DNA from: Selaginella moellendorffii
Taxonomy: Eukaryota > Plantae > Lycopodiophyta
DNA: 64,000 nt
Assembly (NCBI RefSeq): GCF_000143415.4
Contig: NW_003314387.1
Coordinates: 1-64,000 of the forward strand
Direction: 5' to 3'
In this document: positions 17,418 to 64,000 of the stretch, piece by piece
How the letters are laid out: the number at the start of each line of letters is the position of its first letter
Numbering within the stretch: position 1 is the stretch's first letter
Program-made: the position numbers and the translations under genes
Notes under the pieces: model-generated
Databases searched by the model: none
What the model was told of the DNA's origin: nothing
Seen by the model: only the letters and a program-made list of their open reading frames with translations

Positions 17418-19307
17418 TCAAAATTGACAGAAGTTCAGGGTGGAAAGACAGGAACTATCGTCTTCGGTTTTGGTTACATGGTCGGACAAACGAGACGAGG
17501 AATAAGACGAGGAAGACGAAGATGAAGAAGCAGCGTTTCTAGCAGGGCCGAGATGGAGACCGGAAAGTAGAGTATAAGGCGCAGCATTTGTGGGATCGAG
17601 CTCGTAGACGTACTCCGCAGCCTTCCCGGCCCTGTGAGAATCACCAGCAGCAGTGGAAGCACTGAGAAGCGACGTCCAGGCCACAGCATCCGGCTCATAA
17701 GGCATGGTGGCGATGAGATCTTCGGCCTCTCTGAGCCTTCCAGATCTCGCCAGAGCATCAACGACGCACATATAGTGATCCAAGCTCGCAGCTATGGCGT
17801 AGTCCGCCGAGAGGGACGCAAAGTGGGAGTAGACGTCGCTGAGAAGGCCGGCGTGAGCACAGGCCAGGAGAACGCTCACAAAGGTGACGGAGTTTGGAGT
17901 GAAGCCGTGGAGCTGCATGGCGTGAAAGATCTCGAGAGCTTCGTGGCTATGGCCGTTTAGAGCAAAGGCCGCGAGCATGGAGCTCCAGGCTTTGACGTCG
18001 CGGTGCTTGAGATCGTCAAATACGAGCTTGGCCTCGCGGAGGTGGCCAAAGTTTCCATACATCGCTACCAGTGCCGTCTGGATCGCGAAGTGGGCGATCC
18101 ATCCTCTCCCCTCGTCGGTGAGAATGGAGTGGACGATCCTTCCCTCGGCGACGCCGGAGCACGAATCGATGATGGCGGTGAAGGTGACGCTGTCGGGAGC
18201 GATGCCTTCGAGATCCATGGCGCGGAAGAGATCGAGAGCCTCGCGGCGGCGATGCCCGGACTGGGCATACGCGGTGATGATCGAGTTCCACGCGACGACA
18301 TTGTTGTTCTTTCGCGGGATCTGGTCGAAGAGCTGGCGCGCCGCGTGGAGATCGCCGGCGCGGGCGTAGGCTGTGACCATCGTGGTCCACGAGACGCTGG
18401 ATCGCCGCCTGGGAGGAGTGTTCTCGAAGAACTCGCGCGCCTGGGAGGGAGAGTGATTAATCGCATAGGCCGCGAGCATCGCTGCCCATAGCACGGCGTC
18501 GCCGCCAGCGCCATCGATCCCAGTGGCGCGATCGAAAGCCCGCCTCGCGTCCTCGATCTTGCCCAGTCTGCCATACATCTCCACCAGCGCGGTGGAGATC
18601 GTGATCTCTCCCTGGAATCCGGCCGCGAGGAGCTCGGCGTGGATCCACATCCCCAGCTCCATCGCTAGCGACTGGCCGCAAGCGTCGAGGATCGCGACGA
18701 AGGTCACGCGATCTGGGCGAGCGCCCTCGAGATCCATCGCGCGGAAGAGCCCCAGCGCTCGCGCAAAATCCCCTTCTCTGGCAAATGCGCAGATCATCGC
18801 GTTCCAAGAGACTGTGTTCCTCTCGGGCATTTGATCGAAGAGAAGCTTTGCTCGATCGATGCGATTGCTCTTGGCGTAGGCGACGAGCATCGCGGTCCAC
18901 GACGCTACGTCCCTCCTGGGCATCCCCGAGAAGAATTTCTCCGCGCGATCGAGATGCCCGCTCTGGGAGAGGATCGAGAGCATGATGTTCCACGAGAATT
19001 GGTTCCTGGGATCCATCCGGTGGAAGAATTCGCTGGCGTCCTCGATCGAGCACTTGCCATACATCTGGAGCACGAGATTGGAGAGGAACTCGTCGCCGCG
19101 CAGCCGGCCGTGCTTGATCATCTGGGCGTGGATCCGGCGGCCATGGGAGAGCGCCCGCGCGGATCCACACCGCCGGAGCAATGATCCATACGTGACGCTG
19201 TCCGAGGAAGACGATGAGGATTCTAGGGATCTCACTGCCCTCTCGAGCTGCTCTAGGACTAGCGCTGGATCGTCGCTCTTGCTCGCGTGGAGGAGGAACG
19301 GCGCCAT
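17418..19307 (-). CDS. PLS-class PPR protein with E domain (organellar RNA-editing factor type)
   Basis: Intronless ORF with repeated RNTVSWNAMI/PDRVTFVAIL motifs and E-domain HYMCVVDALARSGRLREAEDLIATMPYEPDAVAWTSLLSA. No DYW domain. Confidence 0.92.
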   Translation of the reverse strand: MAPFLLHASKSDDPALVLEQLERAVRSLESSSSSSDSVTYGSLLRRCGSARALSHGRRIHAQMIKHGRLRGDEFLSNLVLQMYGKCSIEDASEFFHRMDPRNQFSWNIMLSILSQSGHLDRAEKFFSGMPRRDVASWTAMLVAYAKSNRIDRAKLLFDQMPERNTVSWNAMICAFAREGDFARALGLFRAMDLEGARPDRVTFVAILDACGQSLAMELGMWIHAELLAAGFQGEITISTALVEMYGRLGKIEDARRAFDRATGIDGAGGDAVLWAAMLAAYAINHSPSQAREFFENTPPRRRSSVSWTTMVTAYARAGDLHAARQLFDQIPRKNNNVVAWNSIITAYAQSGHRRREALDLFRAMDLEGIAPDSVTFTAIIDSCSGVAEGRIVHSILTDEGRGWIAHFAIQTALVAMYGNFGHLREAKLVFDDLKHRDVKAWSSMLAAFALNGHSHEALEIFHAMQLHGFTPNSVTFVSVLLACAHAGLLSDVYSHFASLSADYAIAASLDHYMCVVDALARSGRLREAEDLIATMPYEPDAVAWTSLLSASTAAGDSHRAGKAAEYVYELDPTNAAPYTLLSGLHLGPARNAASSSSSSSSYSSSRLSDHVTKTEDDSSCLSTLNFCQF

Positions 19308-19472
19308 GCCGCGCGGCGTACCGCCAAGTAACGGTATCTTACCGCGCGGTATGGCGGGGTAACTGACACTCAAAGCAATCCAATGTGGATGACCCGCGCA
19401 TTTCTCTTTTTTGAAAAAAGTGCCCTATTGTTTGTTCTAGAAATAGGGGATTAGGGTTTCATATCTCCGGCG

Positions 19473-22400
19473 ATGGAGGCCGAGAGAGAGAGGCGCTTGA
19501 GCCGGCGGATCTCCGGCATTGTCGTCGCCGCGGCCAAGGCGGTGTCCAAGCTCACCGAGGGGTAAGATCACAGCTCCAGCGGCGCTGTATTCTCTGTGCT
19601 TGTGGTGTGCTTACAGGCAGAAAGATCCAGAGGAGGACCCGGATTTCGTCGCGAGGAATCCTCAGTGGGAGCCGGAATTGCCGCCGATCCATGGCGTGCG
19701 GCGGCCGACGGATGCGAAGGCGCAATCTACTGCTGCGCTGCTTGCGGCACTTGACGAGCTCCCTCCCATTGCGATCGATTCGGCCGCCAAGCAAAACTGG
19801 AAGAAGGCTTACAAGACAGTGAAGAGGATTTTGGTAAGTCACTCCACCCACCTGTGTAGTGTAAAGCTTTTCACTTTCGTTTCTTCACAGATTGTGAGAA
19901 GGAAGGCAATGCGTAGTGCTCTTGGAACTGGAGCTCAGATGGAAGGACATGCGCTGGGGGTGTGGAGTCCTTATAGCACGGCGCGTTTGAAGCTCTTTAT
20001 GATGCTCTACAACCAGTAAGCATTCTAGCGCTGAAGTTTTTGCTTCAAAGTTCTCACTACTGTTCCAGGAAAGCGGAGTATGTCGTTCTTTGCTTGATCA
20101 TATCACACCTCTTGGTGCTCATCTTCCAAGGATCATCCCAAGAACAATGGACTCACGTCCGGAAGTTCGACCTCGACTTTGCCGATGCGACGCTTACTCT
20201 GTTCTACACGTAAGTATAAAGATCTAAGAGGTATTTTAGCATTGACATTCTTTTTTGTCTCAGCATTGAGATGATTCTTCGGATCCTCTGTCTTGGATTT
20301 ATCAGAGGTCCCAACACCTACCTGCGGGATCCATACAATAGGCTCGATTTTGTCATCGTGATTGATTCCTGGTAAGTCGGTCTTTCGTGTTTTCTATACT
20401 GAAGGTCTTAAAGTTTAGGGTCCATATTGGTGTAAGAAGTGTGACTGGAAGCGAGTTCTTTGCACGCATTGCAATTCTTCGTGCATTTCGAGCCCTGTTA
20501 GTTTTGAAGCATTTCACGTTCTTCGCTGATGTCATAGTATGTTCTCTGAGGTTATGTTCCCATAACAACGTATGACGAAAGTGTGAATCACTTGCTAGGC
20601 TATCATGTCTGCAGTTGGAAGGAGCATTGTTCCTCTTGAGAACGTCATTTACTTGACACTGTTCATTATCGTCTTCTATGCGCTCCTTGGTATTGAGTTT
20701 CTCGAGGAAACTTTAGATCAACGGTATGTATATACGAGCCTTTTTCTGTAGACTAAAGCGTTTTGCTACTCATCCAGGTGCATTCGAACGACAGATAACC
20801 AGTTGGCCTATCCAGAGCGGTTTTGTGACGCGAAGAAAGTGACGGATGGGTACAAGTGCCCGAGCTCACAAAGTCAGAAATGTCTGGTAAGGAGTTGATC
20901 TTTATCATCGAAACAGTAGGTAGTTTTCCTTAAATGTTTACTCTTGCAGTGCAGGTGTCCGGTAATCCCAACTGGGGATCTACAAACTTTGATCAGTTCC
21001 ACTATGCCCTGCTCACTATGTTTCAGGTTCTCATTTGACAATTTTGTGTCTTTTAAAATTGTTCTGACGGTCGCTGCTTGTTTCAAGGTCATATCCTTGG
21101 AAGGTTGGAGTCTCTTGATGTACAGCATCAAGGATGCCGAAGCTGCGCAAGCAGGTGCTGCTTCTAATGTTTCTTCTTCTTGTTGACTCCTCAAGTCTCT
21201 TGGATGCAGATGCATATTTTATGACTTTAGTCGTTTTTGGCACATACTTGCTTATTAATGTTTTCATTGCTGGTATAAGTGGAGTGTTCCTTCGAGTGAG
21301 GGCTGAACATCAGGCAAGAACTTTATCTCTCTGAATTCTATATGTTTTGTGTTTTCTTTTTCCAGATGCTGCTAAAGAAAAGCCGCCAACCGAACCAAGT
21401 TACTTTCTACAACGCAACGGTAATGGCAAATGTTCTCAAAGACGACATTATTAAGGACGATGAGAGGAACAAGAGATGGCACATCCGTTTCATAAACAGA
21501 TCAAAGAAAATGCACCGGGACGTCATTCGTGCTGTAAGTCGTACTCGGTCGTCCGTGAAGGCGGCCTTTCAGGCCACCTCGTTCAGGTTCAGTAGACAGT
21601 TCTCCATGGCTGGGGGTAGCCGGCGGTTTTCACGAACTTACTCACGGGCGCTGAGTCGTAGTGTGACCATGGGTATGAGAGCAGCAATGGACTTGTCGCA
21701 TAAGTCCCGTGCAATTGTTGAAAATCCAAACTTCAACCGGGGGGTGCTATTGGCGGTCACTATAAACATCATCATCTTGTGCCTGTACAAATATGGGATG
21801 TCGAACGATTTACTCTATACTCTTTGTACGTCTGATGGTTTTTGTTTCTGGAATTTCTTTCTGACGTCCTTAACATGGTGACAGATGCTATTCAAGCGGT
21901 GCTGCTTGTTATATTTGCCACAGAGATGGTTTTGCGATTTCTTGCGTATGGACCTGGGCCATTTATTGCAGACAGTGAGTACATACTGTTTATCTTGTCC
22001 TTCACTGAACATGCCTGTCTTTATCAGAAATGAACGTGTTCGATGTTTTCGTGATCTCCGTGTCTGCTGGGGCTTTGGTTTCAAGAGCTTATCCCAATAT
22101 CTCTTCAGTTCGGGTTTTGCGATGGTTTTACTTGTCGAAAAAGTATGTGGATAAACATCCAAGTACAGTGGTAAGGCTCGTGTACACAGTTTTTTTTTTT
22201 TTTTTTCCTGCTCTTACTTTTCTTTTAACTGACTTTAACTTCTCCCAGGCCACATGTATAAAAAGTGTGGGCTCTCTTGTTAGTGTTTTTTTCTTCTACC
22301 TCCTTGTTATTACAATTTGCTCCATTATCAGCATGGAACTGTACAGTGGTCAATACTATAACTTTCCGGACGGTTATCCCAGGGGAAATCATGACTCCAT

Positions 22401-25400
22401 GCTGCAGACTATGCTTTTATGGTTTACCGTCACAACAGGTGAATCCTGGGTCAACCAAATGTGGAACTCTATGAGACCCGGAGTGAAATATAAGTAAGTA
22501 AATACTACTATGGTTTTTTCTCTCTGACACGAAGTAATGGTTTTTCTTTCACAGTTGGCTGGCGCCCTTTCTCTATGTATTATACTACTGCATGACAACT
22601 TATGTTATCTTAAATCTTATTATTGCCGTCATCCTGGAGAGGAGCGAACTTACTGACAACCAAAAAAAACAGATACAACGAGTAAGTACCTGGTTTAATA
22701 AAAACTTCTGTCGATGATATTTTTCTCTTTCAGGTAGAACATATGAAACTACTGAGGCGGATGCATAGCAGGGCTTATATACGAAGCGGAAGCTGGGTTG
22801 TAGACGCTGTGGAAGGAGCCCAGGCCGGTTTCAAAAAGGTGGCATCTCGGGTTTTAAGCATGAATGTGAGGGCATTGAAAGATGGTAGCAGACGGGATGA
22901 ACGAGAAAGAAGACGAACAAGGGATGGAGGATCTGAACGGGCCAGTAGTGGACAGTCGGAGCTTCCAGGGGCAGTTTCTGAGCAGCCACCAGGCAATACA
23001 AGCGTCACATTACAGCCCTCAACATCTGCTGCTGCAGAACAATCCCGCACCAGTTCTGAAGCAACATCAGAGAAGTTGCATCGCCGCTCTTCTCAAGTTA
23101 TTCAAACGTCCGGCTTTCCAACCGATATTGGCGAAAGGCGGGAGTCGAGAACTGCACTAGAGAGCGCAGTTCTCACGCTTGCAACAATGACCAAGCCACC
23201 TGTCGTAAGGGCTCCAAGCAGAATGGACAGGAGGCTGAGCCGGAAAATGAGTAGAACCGCCAGCAAAAGGCAGTCGTTTCAGCTAGCTGAGTACGAGGAG
23301 CTTGAGAAGAGCATTGCAACTTTAGAGAGGCCGTGGTACTTGCAAGAAGGGTCACTTCTTCTGTTTGGACAAGGAAACGCCGTCAGGAACTTGTGCCAGC
23401 TAGTTGTGGGAAGTGTTTGGTGGTGGTGGTTCTCAATGTTTTGGGCTGTTATCAGCGTGTGGACTGTGGTCGAGATGAAGCCGAATGGCGATCCCCTCGT
23501 TCTCAAGTCCTTCCTGCCTGTACTGCACAACCTCGTGTTTGTGGTAAGCATCTCAGTTCCATGCTCTGATTTCTTATGCTATGTGATTGGAACAGGTATT
23601 CTTCGCGGAGCTTCTCATGAGAGTTATCTCTCAAGGCCTGATCTTCACTCCCGACGCCTACATGGGGGAGTTTTACAACCTGATCGACGTTTTTATACTT
23701 ATCATCGACGCACTTAACATGAAAACGACGTGGAGCGAGAATTCAGCAAGGCCTATTCACGCTCTGCTTGCGCTCCGGCCGTTTCGATTCGTGTGTCGGC
23801 TCACCGGGTTGAAGAGTTTATTCGGTAATCTGGTTAGTACCTGTCCGGCGATTGCGTCAGTTTTGCTATTCACTTTCACCATCTTTGCAATCTTCGGCTC
23901 TATCGCTATTCAACTCTTTCGTGGCCACCTTTACTCTTGTAACGACACTAATGTGAGTCACCGAGCCTACTGCACGGGCTATTACATCAACAAAGTCTCG
24001 CTTATGGCTCCGCGTGCATGGACCAATCCTGCGTTCCACTTCGATGACATTGGCAACGCTCTTCTCACCCTGTTTATCACGTCTAGCTTCGACAATTGGG
24101 TTGGAAACTGGTTATATCCGGTCATGGACATTGCTCCCGAGAATCATCAGCCCCGCCGAAACCACAGCCCGGTTTACGCTCTTTTCATGGTGGCCTTTGT
24201 CTGCGCTGGAGGTTTTTTTATAATGCGAGTTTTCGTGGGAGTGTTCATCAACGAGTTTGGAGTTAGATCCGGTTCCAAGCTTCTGACAGAACGGCAGAAG
24301 CTCTGGAGGGACATGAACCGTATAATTCAGAAGATGAGACAGAGACCAGTGCCGCGGCCGCAGAAAGATCCCATCAGGAAGTTTTGCTATCATTTGGTCC
24401 ATCATAAGTACTATCCCCACGGTATGGTAATCGTCATTCTTAGTTACTGCGCATTTCTGGCCTCTCATGTTGCCAACCAGACCAAGGCAACCTCCAGAAG
24501 CCGGCAGAAACTTCATTGTTTCTACACAACTCTCTTCTTGGTAGAGATGTTGCTGAAGATAATTGGTAATGAGGTGAGTACAATCGGCAACAAACTCTCG
24601 GGCTACTCTTCTAACTTCTTTCTTTTTCTTTTTCGGCGAGTGCAGTTTAGCGTTTACAAACATGACCACGCTAGTCATTTGGAAGCTGCGCTGTCCTTGA
24701 CAGCTGCTGCGTGTTTGTTGCCTAAGAAAGGCTCGCCTCGTCAAACTATAGGCCGCGTTGCATACAGCTTGCGGCTTTTTTGCCTTATTCCTCACATTCC
24801 AAGGGCCCGGGTGCTGATAAACACTATAATCGTCTGCTTCCCAAGCATGGCAGAGATCATGGCTCTTCTCATGATCTGCCTCTTCGCGTTCTCGGGCATT
24901 GGCTTTCAAATGTTTAGTCAAGTGAAGGATGGAGTTTGCATTGGGCCTGCCATCAACTTCAGGAGCTTTGTAAACTCGTTCATCACCGTATTTCAGGTGC
25001 ACAATGTTTTCACAAGTTGGCACAGATTAACTCTGTAGTCTTACAGGTGACAACTGCTGATAACTGGTCTTGCATTATGGGCGATGTTATGGTGGCGCCG
25101 CCATACTGCACGAAAGGTTCGTCGCTAATGGCAAACGACTGCGGTTTTCCTGTAGCGGGCGTTGTCTACTTTGTGGCGCTCATCGTCGTGGCAAACAACA
25201 TATTCATGAACTTGTTCGTGGCTATTATCTTGGACGTGATCACTTTCGGGCTGGTGAACGAGAACTCGATGATCACTCCGAATCATCTCGAGGACTACAG
25301 GGTCCTATGGTCCAAAGACGCATTTGATCCGAGGTAACTTCCACATTTTCTCTGCTCTTTTCCTCGGAGCCTTTATGCATGCGTACGGATTTGGCAGGGG

Positions 25401-25961
25401 AACTGGATTTATTGGCATTCACAAGCTCAGGAATTTTGTGAATTCTCTCGGGATTCCTTTGGGACGTCGACACAATGCCTCGTCAGAATGGTGAGCTATA
25501 GAAGCCTTAACATTCATCGAGATATGATTTGATTCTTGTTTCTTGCCGAGACAGGTACGCAAGGATAGAGTACGAAGTCATGAGCTTCCGAGTTCCAAAC
25601 AAAGGAATTCCTTTCAAGCAACTCCTTGAGACGCTAACACTCTACAAGATTGGACCCACGGTAACACAAAAATGTTTCTAGCTCGTTCTAAACGCTAGCT
25701 ATAATTCGTCACCAGGGCCTTCCACTCTCGCTACGAATCGAGAGGGAGAAACACATCCAGGGCATTTACAGAGGTGGCGCGGTCATCAAAATCCAAGCCG
25801 CGTGGAGGGGACATCTGGTGAGAAGAGTTAAGCTGAGAAAGAAAGAAGAAGAGACTGAAAAGGAGACTGAGAGGACGAGAGAAAAGGGGAGGCAGGAGGA
25901 GATAGAAAAGGAGGAGAAACTCAAAAGTGAATCAATTTTGTTAGAAGATCTAGAAACCTGA
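19473..25961 (+). CDS. Four-domain (24-TM) voltage-gated cation channel superfamily member, Cav/NALCN/Cch1-like; EEDD filter; C-terminal EF-hand-like region and IQ motif; roughly 20 short introns
   Basis: Pore loops: DI VISLEGW (E at 21100), DII VTTGESW (E at 22441), DIII TSSFDNW (D at 24091), DIV VTTADNW (D at 25059). S6 motifs INVFIAGI, LNLIIAVI, MRVFVGVFI and MNLFVAIILD. III-IV linker LLTERQKLW...PVPRP. IQAAWRGHLVRR at ~25791. TGA at 25959-25961. Confidence 0.9.
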
Positions 25962-26115
25962 CTAGTAAAATGTAAAATGCTATTCTTTCTTTTGAAAAGA
26001 TGGTGGATGTGGATGCTCCAACAATGTAGTAGCTCGTTTCATTATTCCAGGGGATTATAGAAACCATGTCTCGGTCGCTATAGTAGTTTCTCGACGCTAA
26101 CATCGGGGGCGATTG

Positions 26116-28160
26116 TTATGATACTGCGATAGCAGAGGAAGAACTCCCGCCTATCTGTTTTGCTCCCTGTTTGGAAGGAGCTCCGGCGGGTGTGTCTTTC
26201 GATTTGTTGAGATGGTGGCTTGGATGATCGTTGTGAGGTTGAGACTTGGAAGCTCTCGGATTAGCCTGGTGGTAGACCCAAGTTGTAGGTAGAGTCAAGT
26301 CAGACAGAAGAAAAAAAGAAAAGAAAAAGAGAGAATTCGGTCACCTTTCTCACGTCAGGTTTGGTGGATGGCTCTTGGTAAAACCCAGGCATCGGAGTCG
26401 CTTTAAAATTCAGGCCCCGTCGAAGCTCTTTGATTTCTGCTTGCGTCTCTTCCTGCGGAGCAATGCTCAGGATTAGAACGCCACGCTAATACGACCAGCA
26501 AGTTTAAACACCTGTGTCTTTGCTTGGATCTTGCTCTTTTCAGCCGCCTTGGCACTTTGTTTCTCTTCCATTCTCCGGTTAAACTGTTCCAAAGCACTCT
26601 GATCAACACCACTCCATAAAAAAAAAAAAAACAATAGCTAGCAACTAGCAAGAAACAAGCTTCACCTCTTTTCTCTTCTGGGCACGCTCGTTGCTCTTGA
26701 AGGCAAATCCGTTCGCGGTAGCAGTACCACTGCCATTCAATCTGGTGCTTTTCTCCTTGTCCTTCGATGACGGCGGCCTGTGGATAGCGTTAAGTTCCAC
26801 AGCTTGTTGCATGCACACAAACATGTCTAGGCAGGAAACGAGGCAAGCTCAAAAGGATACACCGCACTTTCATTCTTTGTCCTGGCGACTCGGCTGGGCC
26901 TGTCACAAGACATGTGCTTTTAAAGTGAGCAACCGATGTTCACAAGCAAAGCCACCTTACTTACGCGACAGACTTTTTCCCTGTCAATTGTTCCGTCGTT
27001 GTTTTGCTTGTCACCTGCATTGAAGAGACGACCACAGCAGCTAAGTGGTTTCAACGTCAGCAATTTAATCTCACCTGCGTTGCGCGGACTCCCGGAATAA
27101 GTCCCTGTTTTGAATTCCACTTGTTGATAACCTGCTGCTCCGTGGCACTAGCGCGTGCTGATTTTGTTTTTCTGCTCTGTGATGCTGCTGCTAAAACGCT
27201 AGCAGGAGCAGTGGCATCGTTCTTCACTCCAGTTTCTCCTTTAAGAATCGTCTTTTTGTTTGCCAGGCTTAAGTCTGCTGCCTGCAAGGTCTACAGAAAA
27301 ATAACGAAATCGTGCGAAGCATCTTTAAAACTCGGAAGTGGAAGAGATATGGACTCACCTTGGCAGAAAAAACTGTGGAGTTTGTCGACTCTTCGTCCAC
27401 TTCTTCCTTGGAATTCATTGTTGTTTGCTGCTCGGAATAAATAGCTGACTCCATCGGACACTGTACGTCCACCTGTGTTGCCAATGCTGACGCTAACGGC
27501 TCTTGTTCTTCATGGCCTTCCACTTGATCCATTCTCTCCTCTGGATCATTTGTGTACTCCACAGCTCCTTCCTTCTCTTCTTCTTCTTCCTTTTTTTCTT
27601 CTTTTTCTTCTTCCTGCTCTTCTCCTTCCTCTTGTTCTGCGTGCTCTTCGTGTTCTTCTAGTTGCGCCATTGGTTCTTGGTCACCAGAGACGGCCTTTTT
27701 CTCCAGTGACACTGTTCGTATATAGTGATCGAAGAATGCAGCCTTCCTGGCGACCGATCCGGGGCTTGCAGCCCTGCTCACATCTTCCTGGAACTCTTTG
27801 GGTATAGAATTCCACCGCGTTACCGCTAAGTTCTTGACAGTCTCGATGGAGCTCCTCCCAAAGAAGATCGACACCCCTTCCTTCTCGGGAGCAATCTAAG
27901 AAACAAATTCAGACAAGCGCGCGGAGCGAAGTGAGAAAGAAATTATTTTTTTACCTGATCGCTGTGGCCGGCGCCGCTGATCTTCTTGCCGGGGCTGGAA
28001 TCGCAGGAGAAAGCCCCCATTTCGTCCCTAGGCCGCTACCATATGGCAGAGGCTCATTGAGAAGGCGGAGATCACTCACCGCATTGCGCTGCTCGCCGCG
28101 ATCCTTGCTTTCGAGGCATGATTCGCGAGCGCCAGCGCCGGATTCTTCCTCGTCCTAGCT
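26116..28160 (-). CDS. WVD2-like (WDL7-type) TPX2-domain microtubule-associated protein; start codon uncertain
   Basis: Spliced exons give FAFKSNERAQKRKE|FNRRMEEKQSAK...|EETQAEIKELRRGLNFKATPMPGFYQEP (TPX2_C). N-terminal SIFFGR...SPGSVARKAAFFD resembles the WDL7-like motif. Confidence 0.8.
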
Positions 28161-37600: not shown

Positions 37601-38574
37601 ACAGTCTGGGACTTTGGGACAACATTTCTGAACACCATGGCTTTATGCGAGCCTTGTGGGTACTCTCCTCACTTTCTGCCTTTAGGTGCTCTAGCCATGG
37701 GCTTAGAGCGAGGTTCCAATGAGCCACACTAGATATCCAAGTAGGTAGTGCCACCCACACTTGGATTGGGAGCATCAACCATTCGATCTCCCGGGAGAAC
37801 AAGAGCCAGCTCTTGAACACTTCACCAAGCTACCCTACTTGATGGTCCATAATTACTCTAGCCTTAGACCTCCCAGTGGTTATTCTGTCACCCAACACTT
37901 GGGTACAGCCTTTCTGGGCTAAACTGGCCTTTCCTAGCCAAATTGACTCCACTAGAGTCCTCCCTCTACTATACTTTTGGAGCTCACCAAACCCTCTAGA
38001 GTCTGGGAGATGAATGCTTTGGGCTTTCACCCTCGGACTCAGGCTCGAGCTCGGGCTTGGTCTCGGCCTCAGCCTCGGTCTCGGTCTCGGTCCCGGTCCA
38101 AGTCCTGTGTCCCGGTCCCGATCTCGGTCTTGGTCTTGACCTCGGACTCCATGTCAGGTCCTTCTTGGACTCCATCTCGGACTCCATCTCAGTCCATCTT
38201 GGTCCATCTCGGACTCCATCTTGGGTCCATCTCGAACACCATCTTAGACTCCATCTTGGGTCCATCTCGAACTCCATCTCGAACTCCATCTCGAACTCCA
38301 CCTCGAACTCCATCTTGGACTCCATCTCAGGTCCATCTCGGACTCCACCATATGTCATGTGTTAGTCCTCTTATGTCCCTTTTCTAGAGACTCTCTTATT
38401 GCTCACTTCATACTCATTCCTTGAGCACTTCATTGGGAGTCCCACTCCCACTCTCGACCTTTTAAGTCGAAGTTTTTAGTCCAAATGTGTTACGCTTGTT
38501 TTGCTTTCGCTTTGGCCACTACCACGTGGCACCCTTTTGGCTCCACTTTGGGGCTTAAGGATTTGTGTCTCACA
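31662..38574 (-). mobile_element. Family A non-coding LTR element, copy A2 (3' LTR <31662-32964, 5' LTR 37037-38574)
   Basis: Both LTRs end ...tgtgtctcaca. PPT complement follows 32964; degenerate PBS (gatacca) precedes 37037. The right end is followed by ctctc and the interior of another A LTR, so it is inserted in A3. Confidence 0.85.
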
Positions 38575-41500
38575 CTCTCAAATATTAAGTGATCTTTTCA
38601 TAAGTGGTCATCCTAGACCACACCTTAACATCCTTAAAATGCCCAAAGATAGGGGGAACACCCTTCCCCAATATCCTTTCTTCAATCCCCACCAAGTCCC
38701 TCTCCATCTATAGCTGTGCTTGCTGATACTGCCACTGGGTAAGGGCCTGAAGGCCCAACCATTAAGTTCTATTGACCTCTGGGACTTCCTCACCATGTGA
38801 TTTTATCCTTGGTCACACTACACATAAGAATTGATCTTGTTTCTTTCCATAATCTAGGTCTTTAAGATGACAATTCGAAACACTATGGCCCTATACAAGC
38901 CTTATGAGTACTCTCCCCACCTTTTACTTTTGGGTGTCCTAGCCATGTGGCTAGAGTGAGGTTTCAATAAGCCACACCAGGTATCCAAGTAGATAGTGCC
39001 ACCTCCACTTGGATTGGGAGCATTAGCCATTCAATCTCCTGGGGGAGCGAAAGCCAACTTTTGAACACTTCACTAAATTACCCCACTTATTTATTTGTAT
39101 TCACCCTACCTTTGGACTCTTTAGTGGTTATATTATCACCCACCATATGGGTATAGCTTTCTTTGGTCATATTGGCCTTTCTTGGCAAAACTAGCTCCAC
39201 TAGAGTCCTCCCTCTACTATACTTTTGGAGCTCACAAAACCCCATAAAGTCTGGGAGACGATTACTTTGGGCTTTCACCCTTGGTCTCGGATTCAGACTT
39301 GGACTTGGACTTAGACTCAGACTCAAACTCTATTTCAGTCTCAGTCTCGATCTCGGTCTCGATCTCAGTCTCGATCTCAGTCTTAGTCTCAGTCTTGTCC
39401 TTGGACTCGACCTCAGACCTCATCTTAGTCTCCATCTCGAACTCAACCTCGGACTCCATCTCGGGTCCATCTTGGACTTTATCATAGGTCCATCTCAGGT
39501 CCATATTGGATTCCATCTCAGACTCCTTCTCAGACTCATTCCTTACACTTCTATGTATCACAACATTTACCATGTGTTAGTCTTTCTTGTATCCCTTTTT
39601 AGAGACTCATTCATTGTTTCATACTCATTCCTCTAGCACTTTGTTCGAGGTTCTACTCCCACTCTTGACTTTCCAAATCAAAGCTTTTGGTCCAAACATG
39701 TTATGTTTGTTGGCTTTCCACTTCAACCACTATGATGTGGCACCCTTTTAGCTCCACTTTGGGGCTTAGGGATTTGTGCATAACTCTATTACCCATAGAC
39801 GAAGTTTAATATTCTCATCGAATAATAAACTATTTTATAAAATAACTTTATTATGGGTTACCATTTTCATCCTTGGCACTAAGCCAATATTTATCAATAG
39901 TTCTACACCAAAGGCTCACCATGCCTTGTCTATCCTCACAAGGGTATAGTGTCTCCAATTTAGAAATCTCCCTTTATTTGTTTAGTTCTCGCTTTTGGTC
40001 TCAATTTTACTACTCATTCTGGAGTAAGCTCAGGCTCTACCAACATAGCCATCACACTTTAGGATTTTAATATTGACATTTCAAGTCAATTTCTTAGGTG
40101 TTACATTACACCAGTTATACAAACACTACTTTCCCATAGTTTATGCTAGGGTTGTCTATAGTTCTATCATTTGGCTATCTTGCTGTTCCCTCTCTTGGAG
40201 CTTTCACTTTCTGCATATTAGAACATTCGGGAATCCATCCTTAGAAACATATTTCCTTTCTCATAATTTGTTAGTATCCAACACCTAAATGTTCCACGCC
40301 TAACTTTGCCACTTGGATTCTTTTCAATAATTTCCATAGCCCAATCTTGGCTACTAGTCTTTTACTCTAATTTTTTAATTTTTTTACCAAGCAATATAGG
40401 AACACTATTTCCATCATCGAGGTATGTTTTTGGTTCTATAGTAAAGGCTCTATTTTGCCAAATCCAAAAGATGTTTATTCCTAGTAAGTTTTTTTAATAT
40501 TTTTTGCTATGGGCTCTATCCATAGCCCAACTTTGTAACCTTTCTATAGGTGTTTCTTAAAGATTACTTTCTTGGACTCACTATATTAATATAGCATATT
40601 CCCTTAAGTGTCTTTTCCATTTGGTCACCTCGACCAAGTCATACCATCACTAATAGTTCAAATCAACACTTTGAACTAGGAATCTTATTCCTTAACTTAA
40701 TAAGGGCTTTGTCCTTATTTAGTTATAAGATCATCTAATGATCTCACTTTAACACTTTGATTATGACCTCTGCACCTAAGCTAGCCCTTTGAGCCAAGAG
40801 TCCATAATAACTGAGATTGGGTGTCTTTATTTCATTCACCACATCCTTAATGCCACTTACACTAAAGTGTTCAAATTAAATATGTTGAGCTTTCACATTA
40901 AGCAATTTAACTGTGCATTATGACTCTAGGGCATCCCCCATTTGGTAGTGTGCATAAGCCAACTTCTTTACTAAGAGTCTATAATCACCAAAAAATGAGT
41001 GTCTTTATATTCCAAACCATCATTACACCCTAGTGAGTTAAAACTCAAACCCAAACAATAAAGAGTTAGGACTTGAACCCAACCTTCATATATGCATCTA
41101 CGGGCAACATCACCAAAGATGTCTGGCATAACTCTCCACGCTGGTGCACCAACTTATATTTAACACATGCTACAGATTACAGCTTAGGAACTTAATTCCT
41201 CTGAGCTTCCAAATCTTCTCATTTAACATACTATTTAACCAGTCTGTGATCATACATGAACTCCTCCATGCTTGGCCCCATGGGCCACCCTTTTGAAGTT
41301 AACACCTTCAATTAGGGTTTTAGTTCCTCTAACTTGCCAATCTCACTTAGCAAGTCACCTAACTAATATAACATGGTTTTTTGCATAAGCATGAAAGTTC
41401 TCAAACATTGACTTTTGTTTAAAGCTATTTTTTTGAACACTCGGGAACTATTTCCCAAACCTTGATAACCTCACTTTATGGCAAGTTTCAAGACGATGCT

Positions 41501-47479: not shown

Positions 47480-50400
47480 TGTAAGGAACCGACTCCCCGA
47501 GATGTCGTAGGCTAAAGGATCCCCAAAAGCTTGACCAAAATGACAAAGAGTTCATCGGATGGGACCAAGTCAAGGATCGAGTCCAAGACCGACTCTAGGA
47601 CCGAGTTCGAGATAGGGTCCGGAATCGAGTCCAAGACCGACTCGGGGACCGAGTTCGAGTCCGAGTTTGAGACCGAGTTCGAGACGGAGTCCGAGATCCG
47701 AAATCGGGTCCGAGACCGAGTCCGAGGTCGAGTCCGAGGTCGGATCCGAGATCGGGTCCGAGATCGAGTCCGAGATCGAGTCCGAAACCAAATCCGAAGT
47801 CGGATCCGAAATCGGGTCCGAGATCGAGCCAGAGACTAAGTCCAAATACTAATACGGGTCAAGGGGTGAAAGCCCAAAGCGTGCGTCTCCCAGGGGGGGG
47901 GGGCTGCAGGGGGTTCCAAAAGTATAGTAGGGATAGTGATGTCCAGGAACCAGTTTTGAGGGGACTCTCCAGTTGGGCTTCCAAACCGACTTGAGGTTGG
48001 GACTGGGACCGAGGGGCCTTGGGTGGGAGTGAGCATGGACTTGGCTGGTGCCGGAGGGGCCATCTAAGGAAGTGCTCAAGAGCAGCTCCCACTCCCGAAA
48101 GGGAAACCGACTGCGGTGCTCCCGGCTCAGATGGAGTGGTGCCCCACTTGAGTACCTCGTGGCTCATTGGTCCTCGCCCTTCCGGGGGCTTGGGCCTTCC
48201 CTTCGGGATGGAAGAGGGGGGGTAGAGGTACCCATACCGGGCCGTTAGGCCACGGTGTTTCGCCCCGACATCCCGAAGCAAGTGCTGCACCCAAGACTTG
48301 GGATTTAGAGGGTCCCATGATCAAGTCTTGTGGTACCAAGGGGTGTTAGGAATCTGGAGGCTTGGTGTGCTTGGCTGCTTGTGCCTGCGGGGAGTGTAGC
48401 CGAACCTTAAGTCCAGTCTAACCCGGGGAGGGGGATTGGGAGAGATTTGGGAATCCGTAGATGGATGGCTAACACTCCGTTGCTCGTGCAGTGAGTAGTT
48501 GAAACCAAGTAGGACCAAGTAGGAGCTGGTACCATAGGCGAGAACCTTGGTGAGGGAACTTAGCACAAGCCAAGGCAGAGTTGGTCGGATAGACGAGGTA
48601 AGCTGGCAAATTGGAAAGGAAAAATTTGTGGCTTACAATTTGGTATCGGAGCCTCTTTCTCAGTTCTAGCGAAGGATAGAGGCGGATTGCTGGGAGATGG
48701 CAAGGGCAGGACGTAAGCGAACCCAGGCAGAGACGGAACCTCCTCCAGAGCTGGAGCCTCCGGTCGAACAGGAGGCAATGGATGAGGAATCCTTGCATGA
48801 GGAGGACTCCAGTGAGGCAACTTCCAAACAGGAGTCTGGTGGTGAGGTTCGGTCATCCAAGGCTCGATTGGATGTTCTAGAAGGACAATTGGCACAGACC
48901 AATGCCTTGCTAGAGACTCTCGTACGCAAGCTAAAGCGTGACGAGAAGCGGAAGAAAAAGCGAAAGACTGCGGATGCTGGTAGCGTAGAAGGTGCGGACC
49001 CTTCGGCAGGGACTGAGGCAAAACCAGATAAGGTCGAACAGACCGAAGTGGAATCAGTCCCTCAGGCAGTTCCCAAGTACAAACCAAAGCCCCCACCGGT
49101 CTTCAAGGGAGTGAACGACTATAAGGTGGTGGAGGATTGGTTTTACGATATGGAGGACTACTTTCGAGCGTTGCAATTACCAAGCTCGGAGAAGGTCCCA
49201 TGTGCAAAACCATACTTGGCAGATAATGCCAAGTCTTGGTGGAGAACGACAGAGGCCAACGAAGGACCGGTGGCCACTTGGGAAATGATGAAGGCGAGGA
49301 TCCGCGCAACTTACGTTCCTCCGAATGCTACTCTGCATCTAAGGGACGAGCTGAGTAGGCTAAAGCAGACTGGAACCATTCAGGAGTATGTGAATGGGTT
49401 TATGGCAAAGAGGATACTTGTCACGGACATGGGGGATATGGATGCGTTCCATGCCTTTATATCAGGTTTGCAAACCTGGGCTCGCGGCGAAGTAATGCGG
49501 TGGAACCCGACCAACTACAAAGAAGAGTTGGATGCGGCCATCAAGGTGCATTTCAACGATAACCTACGAAAGGGGAACACGACGGGGTCGGGATCCACGT
49601 TTAGCAAAGGGGCCAAACCAAGGGGAACTTTTAGCAGAGGGAAATTCAAGAAGAGTTTCTCTAAGAATGAGTCCTCGGGGTTCCGGAAAGGCAGATCCAG
49701 TGGCCAGCGAGCGAGTACGTGGGGGAGTCAGGCGAAAAGAGATAAACCCACGGATAAGAAGGTCAAGTCATATAGCAGCGTGGGAAACAACGTATGCTAC
49801 AACTGCGGTGAAGCGGGACACTTCTCGAGGGAATGTCCCTACCCGAAGAAGGCCAGAGCCAATATGGCCATCAAGTCGGGCGAAGTCCAAAATGAGGTAT
49901 GTGATCCAGTCCCTAACTCAAAGTTACTCATTACACGAGCAACTTTGGTAGAGAGTCGTTCGCGACATCTACTAGCCCTCCGAGGGAAGCTCGGAGGTAG
50001 CTTTGTTAAGATCCTTATTGACACGGGTGTTTTGGATAATTTTGTGGCTGCAGACATAGTCCGGCAAGCCGGACTAACGGTGCAGCGGCTAGGCGAACCA
50101 AGGACTATAGAGTTTGTTCAAGGTAGCCAAAGCACCGATGAGGTACTTCGACAAGCGAGAGTCGAAGTGGGGACTTGGAAGGTGGACATGGATTTCACCG
50201 TGTTGGACATGGCGGGATTTGACGTGATCTTCGGAATGGACTGGTTCAATCGATTCGTGGTAGCCCTGCATGGACAAGGTAGAAACCTTGTGGTACTGGC
50301 GAATGCCCAAGGAAGAAGATCTAGGGTGGAGGCCCAAGATCTAAAGGTAGGGCAAAGCAAGGCCAAAGATTCCTGCTTAAACCTGGTGTCCACGAGAGGA

Positions 50401-62963: not shown

Positions 62964-64000
62964 TCACGTAGATTGTAGATTGTAGCCTCCACCCAGGAAG
63001 CCTTTGTTGAGCGGATTGTTCCCCGACGAGAAATTCGACCCTTGCGAGTCCAAATCTTTTCTCCGCTCCCTCTCCAATTGCTCCTTCTTCTTGTGCTCGA
63101 AAAACTTCTTCTTCACCGAGTCAATCTCGCCTTTGAGCTGCTCAATCTCGGCCTTGTATCCATAAACTTGCCCCTGTGATGATTCAGAGATGAAGAGTTG
63201 CTCAATCACAACGAGAGAGAACAGAACGCGAAGAGAAAAAACCAACCTGATACATTTGCAGCTCGGATGCCATTGCTTTCATTTGCCTCGTCTTCTCCTT
63301 GAGACTTTTCGAGTAGACCGCCAATTGTTCTACCATCTCTGGTCCCGGTTGTCTTGCCAAGATGTTTCGAAGCTCCACATACAGCTTCTCCTTCTCTTGA
63401 ATAAGCAGATCCTTCTCAACGACCTGGAAGAGAACTCGGACATGTCAGACGACCGAAACAAGAACGAATGGAAACAAGAAAACAAATAGACGAAGTCCTT
63501 CACTTGCCTGCTCGGTCTTTAAGATCAACCGCTTCTGCAAAGTTTGGATCTTCAATATCATTTCATAAGCGCTGGGATCAGTTCCTTCGAGTTGCCTCCA
63601 CCGATGCACATTGAGAGGATTCTCTAGCTCCTCCGACAGTGCTTTTACCTGGCACACACACACACACACACACAAAGGAAAAAAAAGTGCGGTTAGAAAT
63701 TGATCCAGTGGTTTTATTAGCGAACCTTTGTGCGCTCCTGCAGAAGCTCTCGGCTGAGATTGTGAACTTCTCGCTTCAGAACTTGAATGTTGTTGACGGA
63801 GCCTTTCAATATACTCTGCTCACGCTTCAAATCTGTTATCTTGATCTTCAAAAGTCGGAGTTCGTTCAGCCGACAACGATACTGGACTTGTCCTTTCGTT
63901 AACGTGGACTGCTGAATTTTGATTTTTTCATAGAGCAATGCAAGCTCCTCGTTTCTTCTCATGAGCTGTTTCAGCGGAAAAAGAAACGCGCAAAGTCAGA
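62964..64000 (-). CDS. CFAP58: Cilia- and flagella-associated protein 58, 3' exons (partial)
   Basis: RRNEELALLYEKIKIQQSTL...LLQERTK|VKALSEELENPLNVHRWRQLEGTDPSAYEMILKIQTLQKRLI...FLGGGYNL matches conserved CFAP58/CCDC147 C-terminal motifs. Confidence 0.88.
63653..63674. repeat. (CA)n microsatellite in a CFAP58 intron
   Basis: About 11 CA units. Confidence 0.9.

What the first reader, a model, noticed from the sequence alone, without database searches (positions are those of the whole stretch)
19473..25961. Intact four-domain Ca2+-type channel (EEDD filter) in a vascular-plant-like genome
Seen: all four pore loops, the S6 segments and the C-terminus can be joined with plausible splice sites. 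Filter residues are E/E/D/D. Known: EEDD is the animal Cav3 (T-type) ring; angiosperms lack four-domain Cav/Nav channels, while chlorophytes such as Chlamydomonas use them in flagella; some have been reported in seed-free plants, so the class is not wholly new. Inference: a retained sperm-flagellum Ca2+ channel, fitting the presence of CFAP58 in the same window.
Basis: partly seen in the sequence, partly recalled or inferred. Interest (0 to 1): 0.8.

Follow-up and report, generated by a model that had tools for sequence, protein, structure and literature searches.

The report
Four-domain cation channel gene in Selaginella
This spikemoss gene encodes an intact, selectively maintained relative of animal calcium and sodium channels, a type that reviews say land plants lost; I found its plant relatives only in lineages with swimming sperm, though most public mRNA from it is spliced into a form that cannot make the full protein.

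Summary
Window 19473-25961 (+) is a 23-exon gene. Its 1736-aa product is 100% identical to RefSeq XP_024521493.1 of Selaginella moellendorffii. It has four Ion_trans repeats, an E/E/D/D filter and a C-terminal IQ motif.

Spliced transcript contigs from four studies confirm 18 of its 22 introns. They also skip the domain-I S4 exon and use a tandem acceptor 5 nt upstream. The dominant public mRNA therefore matches the truncated RefSeq isoform X3, not the full protein.

The full-length frame is still under purifying selection: 20 synonymous against 5 non-synonymous variants, including 4 of 4 synonymous in the domain-I exons.

Named relatives come from lycophytes, ferns, liverworts, Sphagnum and Ginkgo. 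I saw none from angiosperms or conifers.

In maximum-likelihood trees the plant clade is sister to unnamed, probably green-algal, metagenome channels. It lies outside the Cav1/2-Cav3-Nav crown, and kinship with Cav3 is rejected (AU p=1e-5). The EEDD ring is therefore a resemblance, not Cav3 membership.

The sperm role fits the distribution but is untested.

This scan already noted the same family on other pieces of this genome (s1-380501, s1-351396, s1-355612).

The parts
19473..25961 (+). Whole coding region, ATG to stop codon. 23 exons, 1736 aa, four-domain cation channel alpha subunit (RefSeq isoform X1).
   Evidence: the model translates without a stop and is 100% identical to P0001/XP_024521493.1. 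Four Ion_trans stretches plus IQ.
19473..20015 (+). Exons 1-3 (19473-19561, 19617-19833, 19891-20015): cytoplasmic N-terminus. Inferred introns 19562-19616 and 19834-19890.
   Evidence: Splice sites read. Not covered by laid reads. Supported by identity to the RefSeq protein and by the length of contig X1 upstream of 20015 (445 nt).
20069..20371 (+). Exons 4-5 (20069-20209, 20264-20371): domain I S1-S3.
   Evidence: Joints 20015>20069 and 20209>20264 are present in 4 runs. Two X10 variants here are synonymous in the full-length frame.
20419..20536 (+). Exon 6, 118 nt: domain I S3-S4 loop and S4 (FARIAILRAFRALLVLKHF). Flanked by a 47-nt and a 62-nt intron. Skipped in the assembled mRNA of all four laid runs.
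   Evidence: AG|exon|GTATGT read. Joint 20370>20598 in 4 runs. The exon is present in RefSeq X1. S4 is conserved in lycophyte and fern relatives. Runs X5 and X29 hold about the exon-only share of words from 20372-20598.
20599..20886 (+). Exons 7-8 (20599-20723, 20778-20886): domain I S4-S5 linker, S5 and a cysteine-rich turret. ATG 20605 starts RefSeq isoform X2. ATG 20880 starts isoform X3.
   Evidence: Two X10 variants in exon 8 are synonymous in the full-length frame.
20950..21026 (+). Exon 9, start of pore loop I, with tandem acceptors TGCAG|TGCAG|. The exon starts at 20955 in the full-length frame and at 20950 in the assembled mRNA (5 nt longer, frame broken, isoform X3).
   Evidence: The X10 loose end TGCAGGTGTC follows 20886. 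Depth arithmetic gives 122 nt in bin 20762-20961. Sequence. X3 begins MSVQVSGNPNW.
21088..21313 (+). Exons 10-11 (21088-21154, 21210-21313): filter glutamate E373 (21100-21102) in SLEGWS, and domain I S6.
   Evidence: The three intron lengths 63+61+55 = 179 nt match the record arithmetic of contig X1.
21314..21365 (+). 52-nt GC..AG intron.
   Evidence: Joint 21310>21363 with 3 ambiguous bases in 4 runs. The ends GCAAGA..TTCCAG were read.
21366..22681 (+). Exons 12-16: I-II linker and domain II. S4 at 22099-22146 (ISSVRVLRWFYLSKKY) keeps only two in-register arginines. Filter E721 at 22441-22443.
   Evidence: Joints. The 78-nt intron 22171-22248 was deduced from record arithmetic and from sequence. 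S4 table. Filter.
22734..24573 (+). Exons 17-18: long II-III linker and domain III. S4 at 23746-23814. Filter D1216 at 24091-24093. The conserved III-IV linker lies at 24256-24384. Domain IV S1-S2 follows.
   Evidence: Joints. Ion_trans 2.5e-48 for this ORF. The invariant columns of the plant alignment cluster in this linker.
24646..25333 (+). Exons 19-20: domain IV S3-S6. S4 at 24748-24810 keeps two in-register arginines. Filter D1498 at 25059-25061.
25398..25961 (+). Exons 21-23: C-terminal domain with the IQ calmodulin-binding motif (25779-25826) and an acidic/basic tail. Stop codon at 25959-25961.
   Evidence: Joints. Pfam IQ 2e-06 and 1.6e-05.

Best explanation
This is the Selaginella moellendorffii gene for XP_024521493.1. 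It encodes the pore-forming subunit of a four-domain (24-transmembrane-segment) cation channel.

Shown:
- It is one gene with four Ion_trans repeats. It has an all-acidic E/E/D/D filter ring and a C-terminal IQ motif.
- It is intact on both haplotypes and under strong purifying selection.
- It is one of at least five loci of the family in this genome.
- The family forms a land-plant clade. I found it in liverworts, Sphagnum, lycophytes, ferns and Ginkgo. That clade is sister to unnamed aquatic-metagenome channels and lies outside the clade holding animal Cav1/2, Cav3, Nav and the sampled chlorophyte channels.

Inferred:
- The acidic ring makes it Ca2+-permeable.
- Domains I and III keep most S4 charges and could sense voltage. 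Domains II and IV keep only about two, so gating is probably weaker or differently tuned than in animal Cav channels.
- The highly conserved III-IV linker and the IQ motif suggest inactivation and calmodulin feedback.
- Because the family survives only in plants that make flagellated sperm, its most likely job is Ca2+ entry controlling sperm flagellar beating or sperm development.
- Most mRNA in public runs, whose tissues are not known to me (presumably vegetative), skips the S4 exon and uses the frame-breaking acceptor. Full-length channel is probably made only from a minor or cell-type-restricted splice form.
For: Gene model and identity to RefSeq.

Splicing and a single transcript across all four domains.

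Four Ion_trans repeats plus IQ.

Best solved-structure matches are Cav2.3, Cav2.2, Cav3.2 and Cav1.2 at 345-320 bits. Nav scores about 300 and NALCN about 270, so the protein is roughly equidistant from all animal families.

The filter is conserved as E/E/D/D across the plant clade, with D in domain II of the fern.

Selection:
- 20 synonymous against 5 non-synonymous variants in run X10, against 1184:4024 sites, giving pN/pS of about 0.07.
- 4 of 4 variants in exons 5 and 8 are synonymous in the full-length frame.
- The allele differs at 11 of 1736 residues, 9 of them in linkers, the N-terminus or the tail.

Distribution.

Trees:
- Plant clade plus sister group supported 100/100, and the Cav/Nav crown 100/100 excludes it.
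- The AU test rejects Cav3 kinship.

S4 charges. Conserved III-IV linker.

Reviews state that land plants lack such channels: PMC5824947, PMC6509283, PMC11085791, PMC5111745.
Against: - The only transcripts seen assembled (four runs) do not encode the full protein. Inclusion of the S4 exon is supported only indirectly, by word shares of 0.40-0.45 in runs X5 and X29 and by the RefSeq X1 model.
- No expression data tie the gene to the male gametophyte. It is transcribed in runs of 11 studies.
- The phyletic pattern is a correlation. Many genes were lost in seed plants for other reasons.
- The Ginkgo model is a 737-aa fragment whose intactness was not checked.
- No Physcomitrium or hornwort sequence was seen.
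- Ion selectivity and voltage dependence are inferred from sequence alone. The reduced S4 charges in domains II and IV resemble the weakly voltage-dependent NALCN/Cch1 channels.
Confidence: 0.8

Rival explanations
1. It is a plant orthologue of animal T-type (Cav3) channels, as the EEDD ring suggests, and works as a low-voltage-activated Ca2+ channel.
For: The E/E/D/D ring is the same as in the Cav3 rows of the alignment. Cav3.2 was the best solved-structure match for the domain III-IV piece.
Against: In FastTree, LG+G4 and LG+C20 trees the plant clade lies outside the 100%-supported crown that contains Cav3. Forcing plants, their sister group and Cav3 together costs 128 lnL units (AU p=1.2e-5). 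For the full protein, Cav2.3 and Cav2.2 score higher than Cav3.2, and all families lie within 345-270 bits. S4 charges in domains II and IV are far fewer than in Cav3. Other lineages also carry D at these filter positions, for example Diphylleia with D/E/D/D.
Confidence: 0.03
2. It works like NALCN or fungal Cch1. On this reading it is a weakly voltage-dependent or leak-type cation channel that sets resting excitability or mediates store- or stress-dependent Ca2+ entry in many cell types. It would not be a flagellar voltage-gated channel.
For: Domains II and IV keep only about two in-register S4 arginines. This is conserved as RxLRWFY across land plants and is comparable to the Cch1 rows. The locus is transcribed in runs of 11 studies. 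After plants, the plant profile's next hits among word-search candidates include several fungal Cch1 proteins. In the first FastTree the plant clade sat on the Cch1 side of the deepest split.
Against: In the careful mixture-model tree, Cch1 plus Rigifila is separated from everything else, plants included, by a 99/93 branch. The filter is EEDD, whereas the Cch1 rows show N/E/E/E. NALCN scores lowest of the animal families apart from Nav2.1 (SCN7A). The Nav-like conserved III-IV linker and the IQ motif are features of gated channels. No NALCN sequence was available for the tree, so kinship with NALCN is untested.
Confidence: 0.12
3. The locus is a transcribed gene in decay. The full-length protein is no longer made, and only truncated or nonsense-bearing mRNAs exist.
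For: All four laid runs skip the 118-nt S4 exon and use the frame-breaking acceptor at 20950. RefSeq lists truncated isoforms X2 and X3. RefSeq models at two other Selaginella loci of the family start in the I-II linker and lack domain I.
Against: The full frame is open on both haplotypes, with 11 amino-acid differences, 9 of them in linkers, the N-terminus or the tail. pN/pS is about 0.07. All four variants in the domain-I exons, which would be non-coding in X3, are synonymous in the full-length frame. The skipped exon keeps canonical splice sites and a conserved S4. Contigs drop minor isoforms. Runs X5 and X29 hold about the exon-only share of words from the skipped region.
Confidence: 0.05

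Closest known systems
Animal T-type calcium channels (Cav3.1-3.3)
   Same: Four-domain architecture and an E/E/D/D selectivity ring. Cav3.2 is the best solved-structure match for the domain III-IV piece.
   Different: Not kin: the plant clade lies outside the Cav/Nav crown clade and the AU test rejects a joint clade. It has far fewer S4 charges in domains II and IV. It has an IQ motif in the C-terminus. At 1736 aa it is shorter than the roughly 2100-2500 aa of Cav3.
Animal high-voltage-activated Cav1/Cav2 and Nav channels
   Same: Same fold. Scores are similar across the full length, 345-300 bits. It has a C-terminal IQ motif. Its III-IV linker aligns through to Nav chains, whereas Cav chains align only from the start of domain IV.
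   Different: The filter is EEDD, not EEEE or DEKA. Pfam finds no GPHH, Ca_chan_IQ, Na_trans_assoc or Na_trans_cytopl domain. It lies outside their clade.
NALCN and fungal Cch1
   Same: Four-domain channels with reduced S4 charge content.
   Different: The Cch1 rows show N/E/E/E at the filter. From my own knowledge, NALCN carries EEKE or EKEE. Cch1 is separated from the plant clade by a 99/93 branch. NALCN was not in my trees.
Chlamydomonas flagellar channel CAV2 and other chlorophyte four-domain channels
   Same: They are green-lineage four-domain channels, and CAV2 acts in flagellar waveform conversion (cited in PMC5111745 and PMC11621555). That is the functional model for the sperm hypothesis.
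   Different: The chlorophyte sequences I sampled (Tetradesmus, Edaphochlamys) group inside the Cav/Nav crown, not with the land-plant clade. CAV2 itself was not in the set.
RefSeq and GenBank models of the same plant clade
   Same: XP_024521493.1 is this gene. Other members are its allele XP_024515160.1 and paralogues such as XP_024536113.1. The clade also holds Marchantia Mp2g23520, Ceratopteris KP509_11G019800, Diphasiastrum O6H91_02G023500 and Ginkgo Gb_09885.
   Different: All are automatic predictions carrying borrowed animal names or 'hypothetical protein'. I found no paper that describes them.

Membership tests
Four-domain voltage-gated cation channel superfamily (Cav/Nav/NALCN/Cch1 type) | Four homologous six-segment Ion_trans repeats in one polypeptide | tested here: met
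   Pfam Ion_trans scores 445 bits over four stretches. One 6922-nt transcript contig spans all four.
Four-domain voltage-gated cation channel superfamily (Cav/Nav/NALCN/Cch1 type) | A pore loop in each repeat contributing one residue to a selectivity ring | tested here: met
   E373, E721, D1216 and D1498 align with the filter residues of Cav, Nav and Cch1 rows.
Four-domain voltage-gated cation channel superfamily (Cav/Nav/NALCN/Cch1 type) | S4 segments with arginine or lysine at every third position in all four repeats | tested here: inconclusive
   Domain I keeps R, R, R, L, K. Domain III keeps 4-5 charges. Domains II and IV keep about two in register.
Cav3 (T-type) calcium channels | E/E/D/D selectivity ring | tested here: met
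Cav3 (T-type) calcium channels | Phylogenetic placement with Cav3 | tested here: not met
   The plant clade lies outside the 100/100 crown clade that holds Cav3. AU p=1.2e-5 against a joint clade.
Cav3 (T-type) calcium channels | Helix-loop-helix gating brake in the I-II linker | not tested
   No model or alignment of the I-II linker was made. Pfam finds nothing there.
Cav1/Cav2 (high-voltage-activated) calcium channels | E/E/E/E ring | tested here: not met
   Aspartate stands in domains III and IV.
Cav1/Cav2 (high-voltage-activated) calcium channels | GPHH and Ca_chan_IQ C-terminal domains | tested here: not met
   Only the generic IQ motif PF00612 is found. PF16905 and PF08763 give no hit.
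NALCN / Cch1 clade | Phylogenetic placement with Cch1 and NALCN | tested here: inconclusive
   The plant clade is separated from Cch1 plus Rigifila by a 99/93 branch. No NALCN sequence could be obtained for the tree.
NALCN / Cch1 clade | Filter with lysine (NALCN) or N/E/E/E (Cch1) | tested here: not met
   EEDD here. The Cch1 rows show N/E/E/E. The NALCN motif is from my own knowledge.
Two-pore channels (TPC) | Two repeats per polypeptide, with EF hands between them | tested here: not met
   There are four repeats in one ORF and one transcript.
Chlorophyte CAV2-type flagellar channels | Orthology with chlorophyte four-domain channels | tested here: inconclusive
   Tetradesmus and Edaphochlamys channels fall in the crown, apart from plants. 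CAV2 itself was not sampled.
Chlorophyte CAV2-type flagellar channels | Localisation or expression in flagellated cells | not testable with these tools

The most novel reading that the evidence does not exclude
Full-length channel production is gated by splicing. In most tissues the gene is transcribed but exon 6 (domain-I S4) is skipped and the upstream tandem acceptor of exon 9 is used, so only truncated or nonsense mRNAs arise. In the male germ line both choices would switch, producing an ancient green-lineage Ca2+ channel for the sperm flagella. This channel class is one that textbooks say land plants lost.
Probability: 0.2. Interest if true: 0.75.

Novelty: new member of a known kind. Interest (0 to 1): 0.55.

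Why it matters
Reviews of Ca2+ signalling and of channel evolution state that land plants lost four-domain Cav/Nav-type channels (PMC5824947, PMC6509283, PMC11085791). They use that loss to explain why plants lack fast Na+/Ca2+ action potentials.

This gene shows that the loss is a feature of seed plants without swimming sperm, not of land plants as a whole. An intact, selected family persists in bryophytes, lycophytes and ferns, and at least a partial gene model in Ginkgo.

It also gives a concrete candidate for the unknown Ca2+ entry pathway of plant spermatozoids. That candidate can be tested in Marchantia, where knock-outs and sperm assays are routine.

The clade is a separate deep branch of the superfamily with an unusual mix of features: an EEDD ring, two weakened voltage sensors, a Nav-like III-IV linker and an IQ motif. 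Its biophysics would inform how selectivity and gating evolved.

The value is tempered in two ways. The proteins already sit in RefSeq under borrowed animal names. This scan had also already flagged the family on other pieces of the same genome.

Tried and rejected
1. A first model built only from the observed joints gave a stop 18 codons after exon 5 and a second frame break at exon 9. I resolved this by finding the skipped exon and the tandem acceptor, not by assuming sequence errors.

2. I checked whether the two frame shifts cancel each other. They do not: -118 and +5 sum to a shift of 1 mod 3.

3. A start at the first in-frame ATG of the long open frame (19909) was rejected in favour of 19473 with two 5' introns.

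I used FFT-NS-2 instead.

5. I tried to obtain a NALCN reference. The krill protein P0275 proved to be a Nav, and none of the proteins I could name or place by BLAST was a NALCN.

6. I tried to name the sister clade. Cluster look-ups gave no names and the Atlas search on P0006 gave only generic channel clusters. Neighbouring genes gave only an indirect green-algal hint: MinE, an organellar RNA polymerase whose nearest clusters are Streptophyta-dominated, and CEP104.

7. CFAP58 was not in the purine-skewed region at 33-43 kb, nor in 20 large ORFs. It was found at 63720-63995.

8. Literature searches for Mp2g23520, for Mapoly0069s0001, and for papers combining four-domain channels with seed-free plants found nothing. 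Edel et al. 2017 is not held.

10. Structure prediction was not run. The protein exceeds the size limit, and sequence homology already settles the fold.
Full report
**What is at the coordinates**

The + strand between 19.4 and 26.0 kb carries a string of short open frames that match Pfam Ion_trans. A last one matches the IQ calmodulin-binding motif. A PPR gene lies head-to-head 100 bp upstream on the minus strand. The 483-aa open frame at 23587-25035 matches solved Cav3, Cav1, Nav and NALCN structures at E-values of 1e-53 to 1e-31.

**Transcript evidence**

Nineteen public runs hold the locus. Eleven of them, from several studies, hold half or more of its sampled words. I laid contigs of four runs from four studies on 19962-25961.
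- All four are spliced, with GT..AG joints of 50-78 nt and one of 227 nt. They are therefore transcript assemblies.
- One 6922-nt contig runs through the whole coding region.
- Fifteen joints are listed. Three more (20887-20949, 21027-21087, 21155-21209) and one at a T-run (22171-22248) follow from the contig's record arithmetic, from bin depths and from the sequence.
- One intron (21314-21365) is GC..AG.

**Two frame-breaking splice choices**

Joining the exons exactly as in the contigs does not give an open frame.
- The 227-nt 'intron' 20372-20598 contains a well-formed 118-nt exon (20419-20536, AG|...|GTATGT). It encodes the S3-S4 loop and S4 of domain I. Skipping it shifts the frame and gives a stop 18 codons later.
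- Exon 9 has tandem acceptors TGCAG|TGCAG|. The contigs use 20949|20950. The pore-loop frame needs 20954|20955. The evidence is the X10 loose end and the depth arithmetic.

With exon 6 included, the downstream acceptor used and two 5' introns read from the sequence, the model has 23 exons from 19473 to 25961 and encodes 1736 aa without a stop.

**Identity of the gene**

An exhaustive HMMER search with the largest exon (collected) returned P0001. The model is 100% identical to P0001 over all 1736 residues. P0001 is XP_024521493.1, 'voltage-dependent L-type calcium channel subunit alpha-1C isoform X1' of Selaginella moellendorffii.

RefSeq also lists two shorter isoforms.
- X2 has 1468 aa and starts at M269 (ATG 20605).
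- X3 has 1396 aa and starts MSVQVSGNPNW, that is ATG 20880 read across the 20950 acceptor.

The assembled mRNA in the four runs is therefore the X3 type. X3 lacks S1-S5 of domain I.

Words from the skipped region are held at about the share expected for the exon alone (0.45) by runs X5 (0.40) and X29 (0.45). Runs X11 and X12 hold them fully or nearly so. This is weak support for inclusion in some samples. The reads tool was exhausted, so I could not count junctions.

**Is the full-length frame functional?**

- The other haplotype encodes the same 1736-aa protein with 11 substitutions, 9 of them in linkers, the N-terminus or the tail.
- Run X10 differs from the window at 25 exonic sites. Twenty are synonymous and five are not, against 1184 synonymous and 4024 non-synonymous sites. 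That gives pN/pS of about 0.07.
- The four variants in exons 5 and 8 lie upstream of the X3 start. All four are synonymous in the full-length frame.
- This argues that the full-length protein, domain I included, is what selection sees.

**Anatomy of the protein**

- Pfam finds four Ion_trans stretches and an IQ motif at 1677-1692.
- The filter residues are E373, E721, D1216 and D1498.
- S4 of domain I keeps R, R, R, L, K. Domain III keeps four to five charges. Domains II (RVLRWFY) and IV keep about two in register. The domain-II pattern is conserved across land plants.
- The invariant columns of an 11-sequence plant alignment cluster at the end of domain III and in the III-IV linker, around SGSKLLTERQKLWRD.
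- Only Nav and NALCN chains align through that linker. Cav chains align from the start of domain IV.
- Any likeness to the Nav inactivation gate is my reading, not a test.

**Relatives**

The word searches and the exhaustive search gave the following named plant relatives.
- Selaginella: at least five loci.
- Lycophyte: Diphasiastrum.
- Ferns: Ceratopteris and Adiantum.
- Liverworts: Marchantia (two loci) and two Riccia species.
- Moss: Sphagnum.
- Seed plant: Ginkgo, as a 737-aa fragment.

Among the best 150 representatives, ten belong to the plant clade. The unnamed ones are most like fern, liverwort or moss sequences. None of the named ones is from an angiosperm, conifer or gnetophyte. All named lineages make flagellated sperm, which is established botany. 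Physcomitrium and hornworts were not seen; the word searches score only the 8000 best candidates, so this is not proof of absence.

**Phylogeny**

- The first tree was a FastTree of 138 full-length proteins.
- The second was an LG+G4 tree of 64 proteins.
- The third was an LG+C20 PMSF tree of 38 proteins with ultrafast bootstraps.
- All three give a land-plant clade (100/100) whose internal order roughly follows plant phylogeny.
- That clade is sister (100/100) to a set of unnamed metagenome proteins.
- The Cav/Nav crown clade has 100/100 support in the careful tree. It holds Cav1, Cav2, Cav3 (named), Nav, the Tetradesmus and Edaphochlamys channels and several protist channels. It excludes the plant clade.
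- Cch1 plus Rigifila is split from everything else by a 99/93 branch.
- Forcing plants, their sister group and Cav3 together is rejected (AU p=1.2e-5).
- The full protein scores 345 to 270 bits against all animal families in the PDB. That fits an independent deep branch.
- No NALCN sequence was available.

**The sister clade**

- These genes are intronless and lie on gene-dense contigs from aquatic metagenomes. At least one contig (L004) is from a marine metagenome.
- In three contigs the channel gene sits beside CEP104.
- One contig also carries MinE and an organellar RNA polymerase whose nearest clusters are Streptophyta-dominated.
- I infer flagellate green algae, and therefore vertical descent of the plant clade, but this is not shown.

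**Literature**

In the searchable library, papers state that embryophytes lack four-domain channels.
- PMC5824947 says so explicitly after a database search.
- PMC11085791 and PMC5111745 say the same of land or vascular plants.

I found no paper naming the Marchantia or Selaginella genes. Edel et al. 2017 could not be read.

**The sperm hypothesis**

The phyletic pattern fits it. The functional precedent is Chlamydomonas CAV2, though that channel was not shown to be an orthologue.

Against over-reading it:
- The CFAP58 fragment is real (Pfam 2.4e-17) but lies at 63720-63995, 38 kb away.
- Transcripts occur in many runs.
- No tissue information was available.

I put the sperm role at roughly 0.4-0.5. 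I put the core statement (intact, selected four-domain cation channel of a plant-specific clade) at about 0.95. The combined statement is at 0.8 with the inferred steps marked.

**Verdict**

- The gene is already in RefSeq, and the same family was already flagged by this scan on other pieces of the genome.
- New here are three results: the placement outside Cav3 and the Cav/Nav crown, the selection evidence for domain I, and the finding that the dominant public mRNA is a non-productive splice form.

Noticed in passing
window 63720-63995 (-): A fragment of a CFAP58 gene (Pfam CFAP58_CC, 2.4e-17), cut by the end of the window. It is a flagellar gene, as expected for a plant with swimming sperm. 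It lies 38 kb from the channel gene.
   Followed up: partly
window 17418-19373 (-): An intronless 651-aa PPR protein gene whose start lies 100 bp from the channel gene's ATG. The two form a head-to-head pair with a very short shared upstream region.
   Followed up: no
window 21314-21365 (+): A 52-nt GC..AG intron, seen spliced in all four runs.
   Followed up: yes
window 25962-27900: Transcript contig X1 continues about 2 kb past the channel stop codon. It runs towards a convergent minus-strand ORF (27269-27874, glutamate-rich, no Pfam family). This is either a long 3' UTR or two overlapping convergent transcripts merged by the assembler.
   Followed up: no
L004 15729-18299, L005 10545-13115, L006 13839-16454: In the unnamed metagenome sister clade the channel gene is followed on the same strand by a CEP104 (ciliary tip protein) gene in three contigs. 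L006 also carries MinE and a phage-type organellar RNA polymerase. In L006 the channel is split into three adjacent ORFs.
   Followed up: partly
proteins P0197, P0199 and P0002 (other Selaginella loci): RefSeq models at two further loci of the family begin in the I-II linker (MA[ND]IL[RK]DDII...) and so lack domain I. Either domain I is lost there, or the same 5' splicing behaviour misled the annotation.
   Followed up: partly
window 37800-39600 (-): Open frames made of short acidic repeats (ETE, MES, EFEM units). This looks like low-complexity repeat DNA rather than a gene.
   Followed up: no
window 48697-52584 (+): A 1295-aa open frame inside the region that other first-stage notes call a chromovirus and its non-autonomous partner (43.5-59 kb). 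I did not examine it.
   Followed up: no
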